Virus record (IMG/VR): IMGVR_UViG_3300034117_002447
Span: 124,001-188,000 of that record
DNA: 64,000 nt
Strand: one strand, 5' to 3'
The notes under the pieces were generated by a model that was not told where the DNA came from, ran no database searches, and saw only the letters and a list, made by a program, of their open reading frames with translations. The translations under genes were made by a program, and so were the position numbers. Position 1 is the first letter of the stretch. The number at the start of each line of letters is the position of its first letter. Positions 16,437 to 62,666 of the stretch are shown one piece after another.

Positions 16437-16489
16437 GTTTAAACCGATTCAGCTTGAGTAGTATAATTATTAATACAAATCGCACAACT

Positions 16490-31314: not shown

Positions 31315-31405
31315 GCTATTATTATACTACAGTAGAGAATAAAAGGTTACATCGAAGACTTGCTAAACTTTCGCAAATAAATAAATTCAAATAATTTTAT
31401 ACACT

Positions 31406-34130: not shown

Positions 34131-34142
34131 GTAGTTATTATA

Positions 34143-34415
34143 CTACAAAATTGTATTGGCTAGTTGAACCGATAACCAAATTCCTAAATATGACCCGGCT
34201 ACTGAGCCAGTAACATAACCAAACCATTGGTGTAGTGAATCTTCGCTCTTTGCAATTTTTCGGATTACGAAAAAATTTAGTGAAGCTATTGTAAAATCAC
34301 TAACTGCTGCTAAGTGATATTGAGTTTCAGCAACTGCTCTAAAATTTATGCATAAAATTCCATACAGTACAAGCTGAATTGCAAATAATAATAAACATTC
34401 TTTTAATTTTGTCAT
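34143..34415 (-). CDS. Small multi-TM membrane protein
   Basis: Three hydrophobic segments; GSVAGSYLGIWL. Confidence 0.75.
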   Translation of the reverse strand: MTKLKECLLLFAIQLVLYGILCINFRAVAETQYHLAAVSDFTIASLNFFVIRKIAKSEDSLHQWFGYVTGSVAGSYLGIWLSVQLANTIL

Positions 34416-43410: not shown

Positions 43411-44469
43411 CTAAAGCGCCTTTGCGATTTCTCGAAGTATTTTAAAATAGTCACCCGATGAGCACTCGGAAAGGAACTTGCAAATCTCAAAGAAGTCATC
43501 TACTGTTTCAAATGTCATTGCTGAATGGTGGCCTTTCATATATGAAACTGGAATTACTCCAAAAATAATGGATTCGTACACTCTAGCTGGAGTAAAACCT
43601 GCCTGTAAATAAAGATCTTTACTTACATTAATTGATACGAGCGAGTTAGTGAATGAATTCCAAATCGCTTCACGATTCTGTCTAGGAATCAAGTACGCTC
43701 GATCTAATGAATTGATCCAATTAGTTAAGTCCTCAGTTTCTTTAGCCGATACAGTTAATTGAAAAGTATCACCGTTGAACATTTTCACATTTTCCACCTG
43801 AGTAATAATATCATTTATTATTGGGTTTTTTGTGTGACCTTCTTTATAATTATCAAATGACAGATTTCCGTAATATAGTAAGCTGTTAACAGTCGGCTTT
43901 ATTGAGTTCTCATGCACAGACAAACACGAATCTAAGAATTTTGATCCTATTCCTGGAATAGTTACTGAGACAATTTCTCTAGTTATCCCAAGATTCTCAA
44001 TCGTTTCTAAGAATTCCGGACTTAGAGATAAGTCAGTATCTAAAATAACGATGTCAGATGGAGCGTATCCGCAAGCCAATGCATGTTTTATAAATGTCTC
44101 AAATCTCTGAGCATCCTTTAACTTCTTTTGGAGAGTTGAAAGATTTCTGAATCTAGCCTTTAAGAAAATTTTATCGTATTCTTTATTTGACATATTCAGA
44201 AGAACATCCTCATAGCCAATTCGATACTCCTTGATTAAGTGTTGAGTAAAACCCTCAAACACCTGTCCAAGTATTCCGTCTGGATATATCGGCCTAACGG
44301 CAAATGCACGTTCTGTGTCCATGTAATTATAGAAATCGAAATTCTCGTTTCCGTATTTTTCAGAGATTGCATCAAGTAATCCAATTTGATAAAAAGTATG
44401 GCCTGGGATATTTTCTTCAAAAATTCCTAGTTCGCCAAAGTAGCAGTATAATGATTTTGTCTTTTCCAT
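43411..44469 (-). CDS. GT-B fold glycosyltransferase-like protein (T4 beta-glucosyltransferase-like)
   Basis: LLYYGN..., NSLVSINVSKDLY...FTPARVYESIIFGVIPV resembles the GT-B C-terminal R(V/I)(Y/W)E motif. Confidence 0.6.
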   Translation of the reverse strand: MEKTKSLYCYFGELGIFEENIPGHTFYQIGLLDAISEKYGNENFDFYNYMDTERAFAVRPIYPDGILGQVFEGFTQHLIKEYRIGYEDVLLNMSNKEYDKIFLKARFRNLSTLQKKLKDAQRFETFIKHALACGYAPSDIVILDTDLSLSPEFLETIENLGITREIVSVTIPGIGSKFLDSCLSVHENSIKPTVNSLLYYGNLSFDNYKEGHTKNPIINDIITQVENVKMFNGDTFQLTVSAKETEDLTNWINSLDRAYLIPRQNREAIWNSFTNSLVSINVSKDLYLQAGFTPARVYESIIFGVIPVSYMKGHHSAMTFETVDDFFEICKFLSECSSGDYFKILREIAKAL

Positions 44470-44846
44470 TCTAAGTATTTTACTAGAACTCCATCATTGG
44501 GTTCTATGTCAAGTCTATTATTGTAAAAAATATCCCATGAGTCTGCTGCATACTGCCCAATTCCATGAAGTTCTCGAGGATGATCCCACTCTTTTGTAAT
44601 CCACTCAGTACTAAACTTAATTAATGATCGTGACCTGCGATTATAAAAACCAAGAGGCCGAATTACTTCGGCCAATTGAATAGGATCAGCGTTTGATAAC
44701 TCAGCCGCGTCTCGATATGTGTTAAATAGTTCTTCTCTTATTCGGTCTACCTGTTTTCTACGAGTACAATTCAATAGAATACAGCAGACTTGCGACTTCC
44801 ACGGGTCATCATGATAAATTTCCTGTAAAAGTTCGTATGGGCTCAT
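44427..44846 (-). CDS. MBD4-like HhH-GPD DNA glycosylase
   Basis: DPWK..VCCILLN.T, IRPLGFYNRR, LHGIGQYAADSW.IF. Confidence 0.88.
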   Translation of the reverse strand: MSPYELLQEIYHDDPWKSQVCCILLNCTRRKQVDRIREELFNTYRDAAELSNADPIQLAEVIRPLGFYNRRSRSLIKFSTEWITKEWDHPRELHGIGQYAADSWDIFYNNRLDIEPNDGVLVKYLEWKRQNHYTATLAN

Positions 44847-45658
44847 TAACGTCCTTTAAATCCTGCGAAGTGAGTAATAAAGTGTTTGCCGTTTATTGTT
44901 TTAGGGTTAACGAAGAGTTCTCCAAAGTTAGCTCTAAAAATATCTAGGATCTCTGTAAATTTCGCTGAGCGATTTTCCAATAACCAGCTGTAGTGAAAAT
45001 GGTATTCAACTATGAATAACCTGATTTGATCTAAACTTTCTTGATTTAAAGCTTTAATCATATCGTATTCAAGACCTTCAATATCCATCTTGATCGCAGT
45101 GATACCCTTTTCTTTGATTATAGTGTTAATATTCTCAGCAGGTACGGTGGTGACCTGACGACCTCTAATGTGATGGACGCTATGCTTACCTGAATCTTGT
45201 GATAAGTAGAATTCAACTTCAGTTGAATCGTCCGCGACAATTGCTTTTTCGATAATTTCACAACGATCTTCAACACTATTCATTTGAAGGTTTTGTTCTA
45301 GGAACTCCACGTTATTATGGAAAGGTTCGTATGAGTATACTTTCTTTACTTTTGGAAATTGCGTTAGTAAACGAGTTGCAAATATGCCAATGTGGCCGCC
45401 TGCATCCAACCAAACGTCTTCGTGGTCCAAGTCTTCTAAGAGCATAGGGCCGCCGTTTTGTGCATAATGCGGTATGAACAGAGGTTTGAAGTATTCTCCA
45501 CCAGTAGGTTTAGTAGAGATATTCTGAGACACGTTAAATTTAATCTCTTCAGAAGATCTAACTAAGAATTGATAATCGTGATATTTGGTCTTCTTTTCGA
45601 AAACCTGAAGGGTGCCATTTTCGCGAGCCTCTTCAATTGAGCATAATACGTCAGCCAT
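44846..45658 (-). CDS. FkbM-family SAM-dependent methyltransferase
   Basis: LDAGGHIGIF, SYEPFHNN, IKMDIEGLE, IVEYH. Confidence 0.9.
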   Translation of the reverse strand: MADVLCSIEEARENGTLQVFEKKTKYHDYQFLVRSSEEIKFNVSQNISTKPTGGEYFKPLFIPHYAQNGGPMLLEDLDHEDVWLDAGGHIGIFATRLLTQFPKVKKVYSYEPFHNNVEFLEQNLQMNSVEDRCEIIEKAIVADDSTEVEFYLSQDSGKHSVHHIRGRQVTTVPAENINTIIKEKGITAIKMDIEGLEYDMIKALNQESLDQIRLFIVEYHFHYSWLLENRSAKFTEILDIFRANFGELFVNPKTINGKHFITHFAGFKGR

Positions 45659-45693
45659 TTGTAAGTTTCTTTTAGTAATTATACTACAGATAC

Positions 45694-45957
45694 TTACTTT
45701 TGGTCTACGGCAACGTCCTTTGTTTTAATTGAGAGTTCGTCTGGATTCTTTGGATCAGGTCCTGAAGCTTGATAATCGGTAAATTTACCAGTATCGAGTT
45801 TATCAATCTCATCAGGTTTTACTGATTTATATTGATTGTCTGCTCCCATTACTTTATAGGTTTGACCTACTGGATCGATTCCAACAATTGTAGCACTTTG
45901 CCCAGACTTTAACATGACCTTTTGGCCAGTTACGTACTTAGCTGCGGTCGCGGACAC
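45694..45957 (-). CDS. KOW/SH3-like ORF with GTG start only; probably a -1 frameshift extension of the upstream gene
   Basis: GQKVMLKSGQSATIVGIDP..QTYKV; frame is open back to the A9 run at 45987-45995. Confidence 0.6.
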   Translation of the reverse strand: MSATAAKYVTGQKVMLKSGQSATIVGIDPVGQTYKVMGADNQYKSVKPDEIDKLDTGKFTDYQASGPDPKNPDELSIKTKDVAVDQK

Positions 45958-45980
45958 TATAGTAATGTCCTCAGACTCAG

Positions 45981-47519
45981 TTAGGCTTTTTTTTTGGACT
46001 GGTCTACTAAAATGTATTGATTCTTAAGAGCATTAACGTTCTTCTCGATTGACATCTTAAGTTCATTAAGTTTCTCACGATAGTCTGCCGTAAGAGATGT
46101 ATCAGTTAAGGCCTCTTGAATTTGAGAGATTGAAGTTTCTAATTTAGCAAGATTTTGCTCAATCGTAACTTTTTCAGCATCAAGTGATTTAAGGTTGGCT
46201 TCTCTTTCCTCCAATTGAATAGAGTACATTTCGCTAACATCGTATTTGAAGTTTTCCATAACATAATTATGGAAAGTTAAACCTTTCATTTTCTTAAGAA
46301 TTCTAGTCTCAGCTAATTTCTCGAATACGTAAATATCTTCTCCGAAATTTAAAACGATCGATTCTTTACCAAGTCTTTCATTAACGATTGTTTTTCCAAA
46401 CTCTAAATTAACGATTAGGTCTAAGTTTTTGAAGATTTTAGTAAGAGCATTACGAGTATCAATGGTCTCCATTAATACGATTTCTGAAAATTTAACTGAA
46501 TCGATATTATCAATTACTGAACCATTGATTTTTAGGTTCAATGAGCCGTTTTCGTTAATTCCAAAAGCAACTGTTAAATTTCTACTAGCTGATACTAATT
46601 CTGTGCTCTTCTCTTTGAAGTTTAGGGCACTGAAGGCTTCGCAAGTTTCAAAGAAATCTGGAAAGTCTTTTGCATCGTCTGCTGATACTTGAGTAGGATC
46701 CGCATCTTCCGATACTTTGATAAATTTATTATCTACAAAGATTAGTGCTGAGTTTTCGCTAACTTTATAAAAAGGAGCAATAATAGGTTTTACGAATGCA
46801 TCGCCGTTACCAATACCTAAATTAAACGAACCAGTTTCTTTAGATTCTAGCATGCTAATTTTATTAATCAATTGGTTAACTACTGGCAAATTAGAATGAG
46901 AACGTAATTTCATTTTTAATGAATCAGCTGTCTGTACATTTTCCAATAGAGCTTGTTCCAATAGAGAACATGCATCTTTATAAAGAACTGCACCAGTTAC
47001 TCTCATTTCGAAAATTGAATTTAAGATTTCAAGTTTAATACGATTCTCATTAACGTAAGTTGATAATGATTCTAAAACTTCAGAAACAGTCGTATCGTAG
47101 TTAAACTTAGATAGACCTTCAAAGAAGAAATGGATTGCTCTAAATTCAGGCATAGATTTAACAGCTTCCTCTAGTCTAGCAACTGTATGCTTAACTACTG
47201 GATCTTTGTAAATTTGTGCCTCTTTGATAGCTTGAATCTTGATAGAAAGACCTGCTTCTTTAGCCATGTTTTGAAGACGGCTTGTTGGTTTTTCTGCCAT
47301 TTTTTTGAATTTAGCTACCACTTCTTTAATATTCTCGTTTACCAATTCAGTAGCGAATTGATCTAGTGTATTTAGAGAGTTTTCTAAAATCTGATCATTT
47401 GCAACCCCCAACATTAGTGAGTTGTTAATTGATTCTAATACTACTTTAGCAGCAATGCTAGAATTTACGCTCGAATTATTTTTGAGCTCGTTAGTTAGTT
47501 CTTGTATGAGACCGTTCAT
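45981..47519 (-). CDS. Late structural/assembly protein with C-terminal coiled coil
   Basis: 512 aa, late box at 47540, ends in SKKKA at an A9 run. Confidence 0.8.
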   Translation of the reverse strand: MNGLIQELTNELKNNSSVNSSIAAKVVLESINNSLMLGVANDQILENSLNTLDQFATELVNENIKEVVAKFKKMAEKPTSRLQNMAKEAGLSIKIQAIKEAQIYKDPVVKHTVARLEEAVKSMPEFRAIHFFFEGLSKFNYDTTVSEVLESLSTYVNENRIKLEILNSIFEMRVTGAVLYKDACSLLEQALLENVQTADSLKMKLRSHSNLPVVNQLINKISMLESKETGSFNLGIGNGDAFVKPIIAPFYKVSENSALIFVDNKFIKVSEDADPTQVSADDAKDFPDFFETCEAFSALNFKEKSTELVSASRNLTVAFGINENGSLNLKINGSVIDNIDSVKFSEIVLMETIDTRNALTKIFKNLDLIVNLEFGKTIVNERLGKESIVLNFGEDIYVFEKLAETRILKKMKGLTFHNYVMENFKYDVSEMYSIQLEEREANLKSLDAEKVTIEQNLAKLETSISQIQEALTDTSLTADYREKLNELKMSIEKNVNALKNQYILVDQSKKKA

Positions 47520-47614
47520 TGAAACGCTTGTCTTTTTTATTATTTATCCGTTTTTGATAAGTTTATTTATCTGCTATCGTCTATATTATTTATAGGATAG
47601 CCTAATTACTTACG

Positions 47615-62299: not shown

Positions 62300-62666
62300 G
62301 GGGATGACCGGATTTGACAGGAATTATCGGTTACACCTGCACGCCGAGGAAGATGCTAAGACTCGTTAAAATGTATTAAAACTATAAGTGGCAACACTAA
62401 TTTCTGGAGTCTAGTTAACGAAAGCGTTAACGCTCCTGTTACTGAAGAGCTTTTAGCTGCATAAGTGACCAAGCGGCAACTGCTTGACTAACCCAAAGTT
62501 GCAAAACCAGCATGGCGTAACGGCCAAGTCGAACCGTTACCGACTTTAGCTTTAAGTCGTTAAAGAATAAGATATTTGGTCCAGTTAGAAAATGGGACTA
62601 AGCGTGTAAACGAAGGTCTAATTAGAGGTTTTTTGGACGAGGGTTCGAATCCCTCCATCTCCACCA
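62300..62666 (+). ncRNA. ssrA: tmRNA; predicted tag (A)GNTNFWSLVNESVNAPVTEELLAA* at 62390-62464
   Basis: 5' GGGGATG / 3' CATCTCC-A-CCA with G3.U70; GATTTGAC; T-arm GAGGG-TTCGAAT-CCCTC; GCACGC/GCGTGT pairing; tag ends LAA. Confidence 0.95.

What the first reader, a model, noticed from the sequence alone, without database searches (positions are those of the whole stretch)
45694..46000. Candidate -1 frameshift at an A9 run extends a structural protein by a KOW-like domain
Seen: the ORF ends tcc AAA AAA AAA gcc taa. The -1 frame reads SLTESEDITI straight into the ATG-less ORF 45694-45957, giving about 608 aa instead of 512. An 8-bp hairpin (GGACATTA-CTA-TAGTGTCC, 45970-45952) lies 16 nt downstream. 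The junction creates an LTES site like the putative prohead-protease motif. Known: A-AAA-AAA/G heptamers and A9 transcriptional slippage are established recoding signals. A homopolymer assembly error is an alternative.
Basis: partly seen in the sequence, partly recalled or inferred. Interest (0 to 1): 0.6.

Follow-up and report, generated by a model that had tools for sequence, protein, structure and literature searches.

The report
Conserved A9 recoding site, jumbo phage
A run of nine A's at the end of a late gene of a 271-kb freshwater jumbo phage is a deeply conserved slippage signal. It lets one locus make a 512-residue protein and a 608-residue form carrying an extra small beta-barrel domain. 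This is a solid new example of a known trick, not a new kind of mechanism.

Summary
On the minus strand, a 512-aa ORF (47519-45981) ends tcc AAA AAA AAA gcc TAA. The -1 frame stays open for 97 more codons, to 45697.

Comparative evidence for programmed recoding is strong:
- 37 related viral loci (100-49% identity) and syntenic relatives at about 31-36% identity keep an A8-A10 run, a nearby zero-frame stop, and the same domain in the -1 frame.
- The three Lys codons of the run are fixed as AAA, while all eight other invariant Lys columns mix AAA and AAG.
- The -1 peptide is under purifying selection from the first codon after the run.
- Many lineages have no start codon for the downstream ORF.
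- Distant relatives that carry the domain in frame have broken the run (AAG AAG AAG AAA).
- Natural A10 genomes (609-aa fusions) arose at least 4 times, but only as shallow twigs.

The added domain is an SH3-like barrel (Tudor/KOW class), not specifically KOW. "Structural" is unproven, but the gene carries the late-promoter-like motif shared with sheath, baseplate and endolysin genes.

Ribosomal -1 frameshifting and RNA-polymerase slippage give the same product and cannot be separated here. I favour polymerase slippage (about 0.5 against 0.33).

The parts
45981..47519 (-). ORF-A: 512-aa protein of unknown function. Predicted layout (model of the 79%-identical natural fusion P0006): helical N-domain, mixed beta domain, long coiled-coil hairpin, then ..DQSKKKA and the stop.
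   Evidence: No Pfam or PHROG family. 100 close homologues and 109 remote ones.
45987..45995 (-). A9 slippery run (AAA AAA AAA = Lys509-511). This is the recoding site. It is in phase as A_AAA_AAA, and is also a 9-nt homopolymer for RNA polymerase slippage.
45981..45983 (-). Zero-frame stop (TAA) one codon after the run. It ends the short isoform.
   Evidence: a stop sits at this position in all 37 related loci. It is kept as TGA with Leu TTG in the -1 frame in L019, and kept through Leu CTA to Ile ATA changes elsewhere.
45697..45987 (-). ORF-B: 97 codons in the -1 frame, read only after a shift in the run (S-L-T-E-S-E-D-I-T-I-V...). The stop is at 45694-45696.
   Evidence: pN/pS is 0.22 in the first 16 codons and 0.41 in the barrel.
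45976..45984 (-). L-T-E, a conserved [LI]-x-E tripeptide directly after the shift site. It is a candidate gp21-type prohead-protease cleavage motif (inferred, not shown).
   Evidence: Alignment. The genome encodes Peptidase_S77 and a Gp23 capsid protein.
45781..45939 (-). Five-stranded SH3-like small beta barrel (ORF-B residues 17-69), followed by a low-confidence acidic tail.
   Evidence: pLDDT about 89 in the core. (Z 6-7.8 to Tudor, YorP and NusG/Spt5 KOW)..
45952..45970 (-). It is present in this lineage only and is not part of the conserved signal.
45955..45957 (-). GTG with GAGG 11 nt upstream: a possible but non-conserved internal start for ORF-B.
   Evidence: This GTG is replaced by a non-start codon in 12 of the 20 lineages tabulated. 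Five lineages (L025, L028, L030, L031, L035) have no ATG/GTG/TTG at all in the first 45 codons.
47540..47571 (-). Two copies of GATAAATAA (47563-47571 and 47540-47548), 43 and 20 nt upstream of the ORF-A ATG. This is a late-promoter-like motif.

Best explanation
The A9 run is a programmed recoding signal.

**What the locus makes**
- Most expression stops one codon after the run and gives the 512-aa protein.
- A minority of molecules end up in the -1 frame inside the run and give a 608-aa isoform. This is the same protein, then a short linker containing a conserved [LI]xE motif, then a small SH3-like beta barrel with an acidic tail.

**Most likely route**
- I think the shift is most likely made by RNA polymerase stuttering on the 9-nt homopolymer, which adds one A to a fraction of the late mRNA. 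Plain translation of A10 mRNA gives the long form.
- mRNAs with one A fewer or two more hit a stop within three codons and give a near-identical short form.
- -1 ribosomal frameshifting on A_AAA_AAA (A_AAA_AAG in one clade) would give exactly the same protein and may contribute.

**Shown:** conservation of the run, the frame relation, the coding status of the -1 ORF, and the fold of the added domain.

**Inferred:** that both isoforms are made, their ratio, the level at which slippage occurs, late expression, and any cleavage at LTE.

Confidence that recoding of either kind operates is about 0.85. The figure below is for the polymerase-slippage version.
For: **Conservation across close relatives**
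- All 37 related loci keep A9. The three most distant keep A8G.
- All have a zero-frame stop one codon after the run, and a -1 ORF whose peptide is conserved from the first post-run codon.

**Nucleotide-level selection on the run**
- Lys509 and Lys510 are AAA in 24 of 24 distinct sequences. Lys511 is AAA in 21 of 24.
- All 8 other invariant Lys columns mix AAA and AAG.
- The flanking Ser and Ala codons vary synonymously.

**The -1 ORF is coding and depends on the shift**
- pN/pS is 0.22 in the first 16 -1 codons.
- There is no ATG/GTG/TTG in the first 45 codons in L025, L028, L030, L031 and L035.

**Distant syntenic relatives (about 31-36% identity)**
- L059, L060 and L068 again have an A9-A10 run with the barrel in the -1 frame. 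L063 has A8.
- In L059, L060 and L035-37 a -1 frame TAA lies immediately 5' of the run, so the shift can only occur in the run.
- Relatives that carry the domain in frame have broken the run: P0103 has AAG AAG AAG AAA and P0108 has AAA AAG AAA.

**Points favouring the polymerase**
- The selected feature is a homopolymer of 9. The Atkins et al. 2016 review (PMC5009743) gives 9 A or T as the length at which bacterial RNA polymerase slips with high efficiency in vivo, and as the signal used by Thermus thermophilus dnaX.
- The last codon is mostly AAA, not AAG. The same review reports AAG as much more ribosome-shifty in E. coli.
- No conserved 3' structure exists, and I saw no upstream SD-like element on reading the sequence.
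- Both non-productive frames stop within 3 codons of the run.
- A10 genomes are viable.
- One of three metatranscriptome contigs of 90-95% relatives carries A10.
- This is the only coding run of 9 or more in the genome.
Against: - No read-level RNA or DNA data were available. Only contigs could be laid, so slippage itself is unobserved.
- The genotype of the strain behind the A10 RNA-library contig is unknown, and RNA libraries can contain DNA.
- One clade has A_AAA_AAG, with only 8 A's. That is the classic dnaX ribosomal heptamer, and 8 A's should be less slippery for the polymerase.
- The run is in the phase required for X_XXY_YYZ in every two-ORF lineage. This is forced by the conserved KKK, so it is uninformative, but it is compatible with frameshifting.
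- The phage carries tRNA-Lys(UUU) and no tRNA-Lys(CUU), which suits ribosomal slippage.
- Most known phage recoding events are ribosomal.
Confidence: 0.5

Rival explanations
1. Programmed -1 ribosomal frameshifting. The two Lys-tRNAs slip back one base on A_AAA_AAA (A_AAA_AAG in the L035-37 clade). No mRNA heterogeneity is involved, and the product is the same 608-aa protein.
For: - The heptamer is in the correct phase in all two-ORF lineages.
- One clade uses A_AAA_AAG and L063 uses A_AAA_AAC. Both are established shifty heptamers (PMC5009743).
- The phage encodes tRNA-Lys(UUU) only.
- There are many phage precedents for C-terminal extensions made this way: T7/T3 gene 10, A2, A118, and lambda G-GT.
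Against: - There is no conserved downstream structure, and I saw no upstream SD-like stimulator on reading the sequence.
- Most lineages keep AAA rather than the shiftier AAG in the last codon.
- Under a purely ribosomal model, A10 genomes would make no short form. Yet an A10 lineage is found in at least 24 assemblies.
- A 9-nt homopolymer transcribed by a bacterial RNA polymerase is expected to slip anyway.
Confidence: 0.33
2. Heritable phase variation only. The tract flips between A9 and A10 by replication slippage, so the population is a mix of short-form and long-form genomes. No recoding occurs at the RNA or ribosome level.
For: - A10 genomes exist in nature beside near-identical A9 genomes, in at least 4-5 independent places on the tree.
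- One A10 lineage is seen in at least 24 assemblies.
Against: - All A10 forms are shallow twigs. No deep clade is A10, whereas the out-of-frame A9 state persists down to about 31% protein identity. The two-ORF state is therefore the one maintained by selection.
- A single infected cell would then make only one isoform. That gives no reason to keep ORF-B under purifying selection in A9 genomes.
- Three of the four A10 events checked rest on a single contig each.
Confidence: 0.08
3. Two separate genes. ORF-B is initiated on its own, at GTG 45957 with GAGG upstream, or by termination-reinitiation after the ORF-A stop.
For: - The window's lineage has a GTG with GAGG 11 nt upstream.
- L063 has ATG overlapping the stop (TAATG), and a few database entries start with M at the Leu position.
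- Gene callers list 73-97-aa stand-alone products.
Against: - The start codon is not conserved and is absent in several lineages.
- The 10 codons upstream of the GTG are the best-conserved part of ORF-B and are under purifying selection.
- Independent initiation does not explain nucleotide-level fixation of the A run, or its loss in in-frame fusions.
Confidence: 0.05
4. Artefact or decay. Either a homopolymer sequencing or assembly error has split a single 609-aa gene, or a recent frameshift mutation has made a pseudogene.
For: - Homopolymers are error-prone.
- In-frame 609-aa versions exist.
Against: - A9 is the consensus in 9 independent assemblies of this phage, and in most of about 89 full-length homologue clusters.
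- The same split persists across lineages whose synonymous sites are saturated.
Confidence: 0.02

Closest known systems
dnaX tau/gamma: E. coli (-1 frameshift at A_AAA_AAG) and Thermus thermophilus (RNA polymerase slippage at a run of 9)
   Same: - Two products share an N-terminal body and come from one locus through an A-rich Lys run.
- Related genes use either a 9-nt homopolymer or A_AAA_AAG, as in this family.
- Stops lie close by in the non-productive frames (PMC5009743).
   Different: - Here the standard product is the short one and recoding adds a domain. In E. coli and T. thermophilus dnaX, recoding truncates.
- There is no SD-like element or stem-loop stimulator.
- The protein family and biological role are unrelated (a phage late protein).
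Phage structural proteins extended by frameshifting (T7/T3 gene 10A/10B; Lactobacillus phage A2; Listeria phages A118, A500 and PSA; Ig-like domain additions)
   Same: - A minor C-terminally extended isoform of a late phage protein is made by recoding near the 3' end.
- Relatives carry the same extra domain in frame without recoding, as described for Ig-like domains.
   Different: - The added module is an SH3-like/Tudor/KOW-class barrel, not an Ig-like domain.
- The shift site is a 9-nt homopolymer.
- The carrier protein is not a recognised capsid or tail protein.
- The event is conserved over far greater divergence than most of those cases.
Lambda gpG/gpGT tail assembly chaperone frameshift
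   Same: - It is a conserved -1 frame extension made at a low level with no strong stimulatory structure.
- The ratio of the two forms is presumed to matter for assembly.
   Different: - The gene context and size differ: 512 aa, not next to a tape-measure gene.
- The slippery sequence differs.
- No homology was detected.
Transcriptional frameshifting at A/T runs in bacterial machines (Citrobacter rodentium tssM; Shigella type III secretion genes)
   Same: A homopolymeric run gives two length variants of a structural component by polymerase slippage (PMC4256274 in the listing; PMC5009743).
   Different: - Those runs rescue or tune bacterial genes.
- This one is in a virus, and is conserved as an out-of-frame arrangement over deep divergence.

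Membership tests
Canonical -1 programmed ribosomal frameshift cassette | Slippery heptamer X_XXY_YYZ in the zero-frame phase | tested here: met
   AAA AAA AAA (A_AAA_AAA) is in phase. L035-37 have A_AAA_AAG and L063 has A_AAA_AAC.
Canonical -1 programmed ribosomal frameshift cassette | Overlapping -1 ORF that is coding and lacks its own conserved initiation | tested here: met
Canonical -1 programmed ribosomal frameshift cassette | Conserved 3' stimulatory stem-loop or pseudoknot, or a 5' SD-like element | tested here: not met
   RNAalifold finds 0 consensus pairs in 14 homologues. The window hairpin has z = -1.0. No GGAGG-like element appears in the 30 nt 5' of the run. Stimulators are not obligatory for low-level phage frameshifts.
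Canonical -1 programmed ribosomal frameshift cassette | Trans-frame protein made from unedited mRNA | not testable with these tools
   This needs proteomics together with mRNA sequencing.
Programmed transcriptional slippage | Homopolymeric A or T run of about 9 in the transcribed strand, conserved at nucleotide level | tested here: met
   A9 is found in 34 of 37 loci and in L059 and L060, and A10 in L068. The run is 8 in L035-37 and L063.
Programmed transcriptional slippage | Heterogeneous run length in mRNA, exceeding that in DNA | tested here: inconclusive
   Only contigs could be laid. RNA-library contigs of related strains show A9 (X17, X19) and A10 (X18), and their genotypes are unknown.
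Programmed transcriptional slippage | Loss of the run where the two parts are fused in frame | tested here: met
   P0103 and P0108 use mixed AAG/AAA codons. Recent A10 fusions are the exception.
   Model pLDDT is about 89 in the core. Z is 6.5-6.8 to NusG and Spt5 KOW. Z to PHF19 Tudor is 7.8, and LBR Tudor and YorP score 7.1, so Tudor matches are as good or better.
   There is no Pfam KOW hit. Only E = 0.04 to an Spt5 KOW chain was found with the family profile. Single members hit other SH3-like families.
T4-type prohead-protease substrate | The phage encodes a gp21-type (Peptidase_S77) protease | tested here: met
   PF03420 scores 38.4 bits, above its cut-off, and PF07068 (Gp23) has E = 1.5e-41.
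T4-type prohead-protease substrate | Cleavage after Glu in a [LI]-x-E motif; the protein is located in the prohead | not testable with these tools
   The motif is conserved right after the run in most lineages. It is a common tripeptide, and neither location nor cleavage is known.

The most novel reading that the evidence does not exclude
The tract could be a two-level switch.
- Heritable A9/A10 flipping would set whether a phage lineage makes mainly the short or mainly the long form.
- Polymerase slippage would guarantee that both forms appear in every infected cell.
- The SH3-like module would be a cleavable assembly or targeting domain, removed by the gp21-type prohead protease at the conserved [LI]xE just after the shift site.

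That would make this a conserved huge-phage morphogenesis factor (with relatives in Lak megaphages) whose dosage is controlled by a homopolymer.
Probability: 0.15. Interest if true: 0.7.

Novelty: new member of a known kind. Interest (0 to 1): 0.55.

Why it matters
- It adds a very well-supported recoding event to jumbo phages, in a protein family that has no annotation at all. The event is conserved from near-identical genomes down to about 31% identity.
- The family spans freshwater jumbo phages and has remote relatives in Prevotella Lak megaphages and Tenacibaculum phages.
- Gene callers currently split it into a 512-aa protein and an orphan small ORF, or call a 609-aa fusion. Annotation of these genomes should carry a slippage feature.
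- The family offers a natural comparison of three states for studying how isoform ratios are set: out of frame with a run (A9, or A8G in one clade), recent A10 fusions, and ancient in-frame fusions without a run.
- It also gives a natural test of polymerase slippage against ribosomal frameshifting on the same signal.

Tried and rejected
**Function of ORF-A: no answer**
- Pfam and PHROGs gave nothing for ORF-A or ORF-B, nor for 50 remote homologues.
- A profile search against PDB sequences gave nothing significant.
- Foldseek against PDB gave nothing for the 609-aa model. VIA-wide returned only coiled-coil hairpin look-alikes.
- BFVD gave only uncharacterised phage proteins.
- ESM Atlas features gave no usable hit.

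**Cultured or annotated relatives: not found**
- blastn and tblastn of ORF-A against GenBank phages found no match.
- Remote homologues hit only unannotated Lak phage records. P0129 hit nothing.

**Reads**
- Only Logan contigs were served, so A9/A10 fractions could not be measured in DNA or RNA.

**Ideas dropped**
- The hairpin as a stimulator.
- TATAAATA, the T4 late consensus, as the relevant promoter. It occurs upstream of ORF-A in the window but is not conserved in homologues; GATAAATAA is.
- The second coding A8 run in the genome (C1 122922-122929). It looked like another candidate, but the next gene has its own ATG overlapping the stop.

Full report
**1. What is in the sequence**

All genes in this part of the window lie on the minus strand. 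ORF-A (47519..45981, 512 aa) ends ..cag tcc AAA AAA AAA gcc TAA. The A9 run is 45987-45995 and the stop is 45981-45983.

The -1 frame reads K K S L T E S E D I T I V S A T A A K .. and stays open for 97 codons after the run, to a stop at 45694-45696.

The only early start-like codon in the downstream frame is GTG at 45955-45957, with GAGG 11 nt upstream.

**2. Where it comes from**

The window is part of a 270,962-bp IMG/VR virus record with direct terminal repeats. It comes from freshwater and lake metagenomes.

The genome encodes the following:
- a T4-type major capsid protein (PF07068) and a gp21-type prohead protease (PF03420);
- a large terminase and a gp6-like baseplate wedge protein inside the window;
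- 26 tRNAs, including tRNA-Lys(UUU), and a tmRNA.

It is therefore a jumbo myovirus with a T4-like morphogenetic core. GenBank phages hold no DNA or protein match to ORF-A.

**3. Comparative test of the recoding hypothesis**

*Close relatives.* search for related loci returned 37 viral loci whose ORF-A is 100% to 49% identical. The pattern is uniform:
- In every locus ORF-A is exactly 512 codons.
- The run is A9 in 34 loci. It is AAA AAA AAG in the three most distant (L035-37).
- A zero-frame stop follows one codon later.
- A -1 ORF of 88-102 codons follows, and its peptide is conserved from the first post-run codon (S-[LI]-[TSN]-E-[SA]-E-[DS]-I-T-L-V..).

*The stop is maintained through different codons.* L019 has TGA with Leu TTG in the -1 frame. 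Other lineages keep TAA with Leu CTA or Ile ATA.

*The run is fixed at the nucleotide level.* Lys509 and Lys510 are AAA in 24 of 24 distinct sequences, and Lys511 is AAA in 21 of 24. All eight other invariant Lys columns of ORF-A use both AAA and AAG. Overall usage is 716 AAA to 342 AAG. The flanking Ser508 and Ala512 codons vary synonymously.

*The first 16 -1 codons are under purifying selection.* These lie upstream of any possible start. pN/pS there is 0.22, with variable columns distributed 9/4/16 over codon positions 1/2/3.

*There is often no start codon.* L025, L028, L030, L031 and L035 have no ATG, GTG or TTG anywhere in the first 45 codons of ORF-B. The window's GTG is replaced by a non-start codon in 12 of the 20 lineages tabulated.

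*Distant relatives.* A full phmmer search with a natural 609-aa fusion found 109 relatives.
- Short forms of 526-532 aa end ..KKK plus a few residues. These are 31-36% identical over the aligned stretch. L059, L060 and L063 share the flanking genes: an upstream gene of about 660-680 aa in all three, and FkbM methyltransferase and HhH-GPD downstream in L059 and L060. The L068 contig is too short to show neighbours.
- Their DNA shows tct-A9-gta agc TAA (L059), tat-A9-gaa tta gtc TAA (L060), cta-A9 (effectively A10, L068) and tct-A8-c-TAATG (L063).
- Each has the same small barrel domain in the -1 frame.
- In L059, L060 and L035-37 the -1 frame has a TAA immediately 5' of the run. The only place to change frame is therefore the run itself.

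*In-frame fusions break the run.* Relatives in which the barrel is fused in frame keep the Lys motif but break the homopolymer. P0103 has AAG AAG AAG AAA and P0108 has AAA AAG AAA. P0106 and P0129 have no Lys run at all.

A run where the frames differ, and no run where they agree, is the classical signature of a functional slippery signal.

**4. A10 genomes**

Thirteen of the 100 closest database proteins are 609 aa. Their DNA has A10 in an otherwise identical context.
- One of them, P0035, is encoded on at least 24 independently assembled contigs. A10 genomes are therefore real and viable.
- On a tree of 89 full-length sequences, the fused forms need at least 4-5 independent changes. All are shallow twigs next to near-identical 512-aa forms, and no deep clade is fused.
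- The tract therefore mutates recurrently, but the out-of-frame state is the one that persists.

**5. The run in its genome**

With a crude gene call (308 ORFs, 91% coding), the ORF-A run is the only homopolymer of 9 or more inside coding sequence. About 10 runs of 9 or more are expected from base composition. Five are seen, and four of them are intergenic.

**6. Stimulators**

RNAalifold finds no conserved pair in the 70 nt starting at the run. I saw no SD-like element in the 30 nt upstream. No terminator-like site lies between the two ORFs on the coding strand.

**7. RNA evidence**

Only assembled contigs were available.
- The DNA contig of run X1 has A9.
- Contigs from three metatranscriptome libraries belong to 90-95% identical relatives. 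Two have A9 (X17, X19) and one has A10 (X18, an extra T behind 45986).
- The genotype of those strains is unknown, and RNA libraries can contain DNA.

This is only a hint.

**8. What the protein is**

*Whole protein.* AlphaFold2 on a natural fusion (P0006, 79% identical to ORF-A; 41-sequence alignment; mean pLDDT 73) gives this layout:
- a helical N-domain (1-229);
- a mixed beta domain (241-411);
- a long coiled-coil hairpin (436-514), ending at the KKK;
- a disordered linker (513-527);
- a small barrel (534-567);
- a disordered tail.

*ORF-B alone.* The window's own sequence, folded with a 30-sequence alignment, gives a five-stranded barrel with pLDDT about 89 in the core.
- Its best structural neighbours are Tudor, YorP, NusG/Spt5 KOW, chromo and SH3 domains, at Z 6-7.8. 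Foldseek E-values are about 2e-3.
- It is therefore an SH3-like small barrel, and a specific KOW assignment is not supported.

*Function.* No family or solved structure explains ORF-A.
- BFVD finds the same fold in uncharacterised proteins of uncultured phages and of Tenacibaculum phage PTm1.
- Remote sequence relatives occur in Prevotella Lak megaphages.

**9. Timing**

Two copies of GATAAATAA lie 43 and 20 nt upstream of the ORF-A start. A copy 20-30 nt upstream is conserved in all homologues, including the 31%-identical ones.

In the genome the motif occurs 30 times. Twenty-six copies are intergenic, most of them about 16-30 nt upstream of a start. The motif precedes the following genes:
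- tail sheath;
- baseplate wedge;
- a head-closure-like protein;
- a virion-structural-like protein;
- endolysin.

This supports late expression, and so a morphogenetic or virion role. It does not prove one.

**10. The [LI]xE motif**

Directly after the run, the -1 peptide has L-T-E. Homologues have LSE, ISE, LNE, INE and LGE, and in-frame fusions have LFE, ILE and LLE.

From general knowledge of T4, not tested here, the gp21 prohead protease cuts after Glu in such motifs. This phage encodes a gp21-type protease. The tripeptide is common, and nothing shows that the protein enters the prohead, so this remains a lead.

**11. Mechanism**

Adding one A to the mRNA, or slipping the ribosome back one base, gives the identical 608-aa product. 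mRNAs with A8 or A11 stop within three codons (..KKKPN or ..KKKKPN), so every other outcome is a near-copy of the short form.

*Points favouring the polymerase:*
- Selection is for a homopolymer of 9 rather than for the shiftiest heptamer. [quoted passage not shown]
- Nine A/T is the length at which bacterial RNA polymerase slips efficiently in vivo, and it is the length used by T. thermophilus dnaX (PMC5009743).
- No stimulators are present.
- A10 genomes are viable.

*Points favouring the ribosome:*
- One clade has A_AAA_AAG, and L063 has A8C.
- The phage carries tRNA-Lys(UUU).
- Most phage precedents are ribosomal.

My estimates are as follows:

| Explanation | Probability |
|---|---|
| Recoding of some kind | about 0.85 |
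| ...mainly polymerase slippage | about 0.5 |
| ...mainly ribosomal frameshifting | about 0.33 |
| DNA-level phase variation only | 0.08 |
| Independent initiation of ORF-B | 0.05 |
| Artefact or pseudogene | 0.02 |

**12. Comparison with known systems and verdict**

The arrangement works like dnaX, where a Lys-run recoding site occurs with both mechanisms in different species. It also works like the frameshift-made C-terminal extensions of phage capsid and tail proteins.

It differs in four ways:
- the carrier protein;
- the added fold;
- the homopolymeric signal;
- the depth of conservation.

It is a new member of a known kind and is not described in the papers I could search. Interest is moderate. 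It is a clean, annotatable and experimentally tractable recoding event in an uncharacterised protein family shared by very large phages, but it is not a new principle.

Noticed in passing
window 62300-62666 (+): A phage-encoded tmRNA gene with an unusually long predicted tag peptide ending ..EELLAA. It lies between the baseplate wedge gene and the next ORF.
   Followed up: partly
genome C1 28414-54866 (outside the window): There are 26 tRNA genes in two clusters, including tRNA-Lys(UUU) but no tRNA-Lys(CUU). This could bear on decoding of the A run.
   Followed up: partly
window 47540-47571 (-) and 28 other places in the genome: GATAAATAA occurs 30 times and 26 copies are intergenic, most about 16-30 nt upstream of a start. 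It precedes the sheath, baseplate wedge, head-closure-like, virion-structural-like and endolysin genes, so it is probably the late promoter of this phage group. It is conserved upstream of ORF-A homologues down to 31% identity.
   Followed up: yes
window 45678-45687 (-); also 16458-16467 (+), 31321-31330 (-), 34137-34146 (-): GTAGTATAAT is an extended -10-like motif found 4 times against 0.18 expected. The copy right after the ORF-B stop precedes the FkbM methyltransferase gene and is conserved (as GTATAAT or TAGTATAAT) in nearly all related loci. It is likely a different, earlier promoter class.
   Followed up: partly
genome C1 about 100030-101904 (outside the window; L064, L077): The Peptidase_S77 (gp21-type) match sits inside a 612-674-aa open frame, far longer than T4 gp21. 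The protease may be fused to another, possibly scaffold-like, part. TATAAATA lies upstream of it and of the capsid gene.
   Followed up: no
whole genome: Long homopolymers are strongly avoided in coding sequence. Runs of 7 are common (51 coding), but only one coding run of 8 and one of 9 exist.
   Followed up: yes
genome C1 122922-122929 (outside the window): This is the only other coding run of 8 A's. It lies 13 nt before the end of a 369-aa gene, directly upstream of a GroES/gp31-like gene that has its own ATG overlapping the stop. It is probably incidental.
   Followed up: partly
genome C1 169245-169253 (outside the window): An A9 run starts inside the stop codon of the 627-aa late-motif gene (T-AAAAAAAAA). 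Its meaning is unknown.
   Followed up: no
Prevotella phage Lak records (e.g. MK250016.1 55524-56702): Remote homologues of ORF-A (about 23-25% identity, E down to 2e-24 for query P0166) occur in all Lak megaphage genomes, which carry no annotation. The family may be a shared huge-phage gene.
   Followed up: no
window 44846-45658 (-) and 44427-44846 (-): An FkbM-type methyltransferase gene and an HhH-GPD glycosylase-like gene follow ORF-B. This synteny holds even in the 31%-identical relatives L059 and L060.
   Followed up: no
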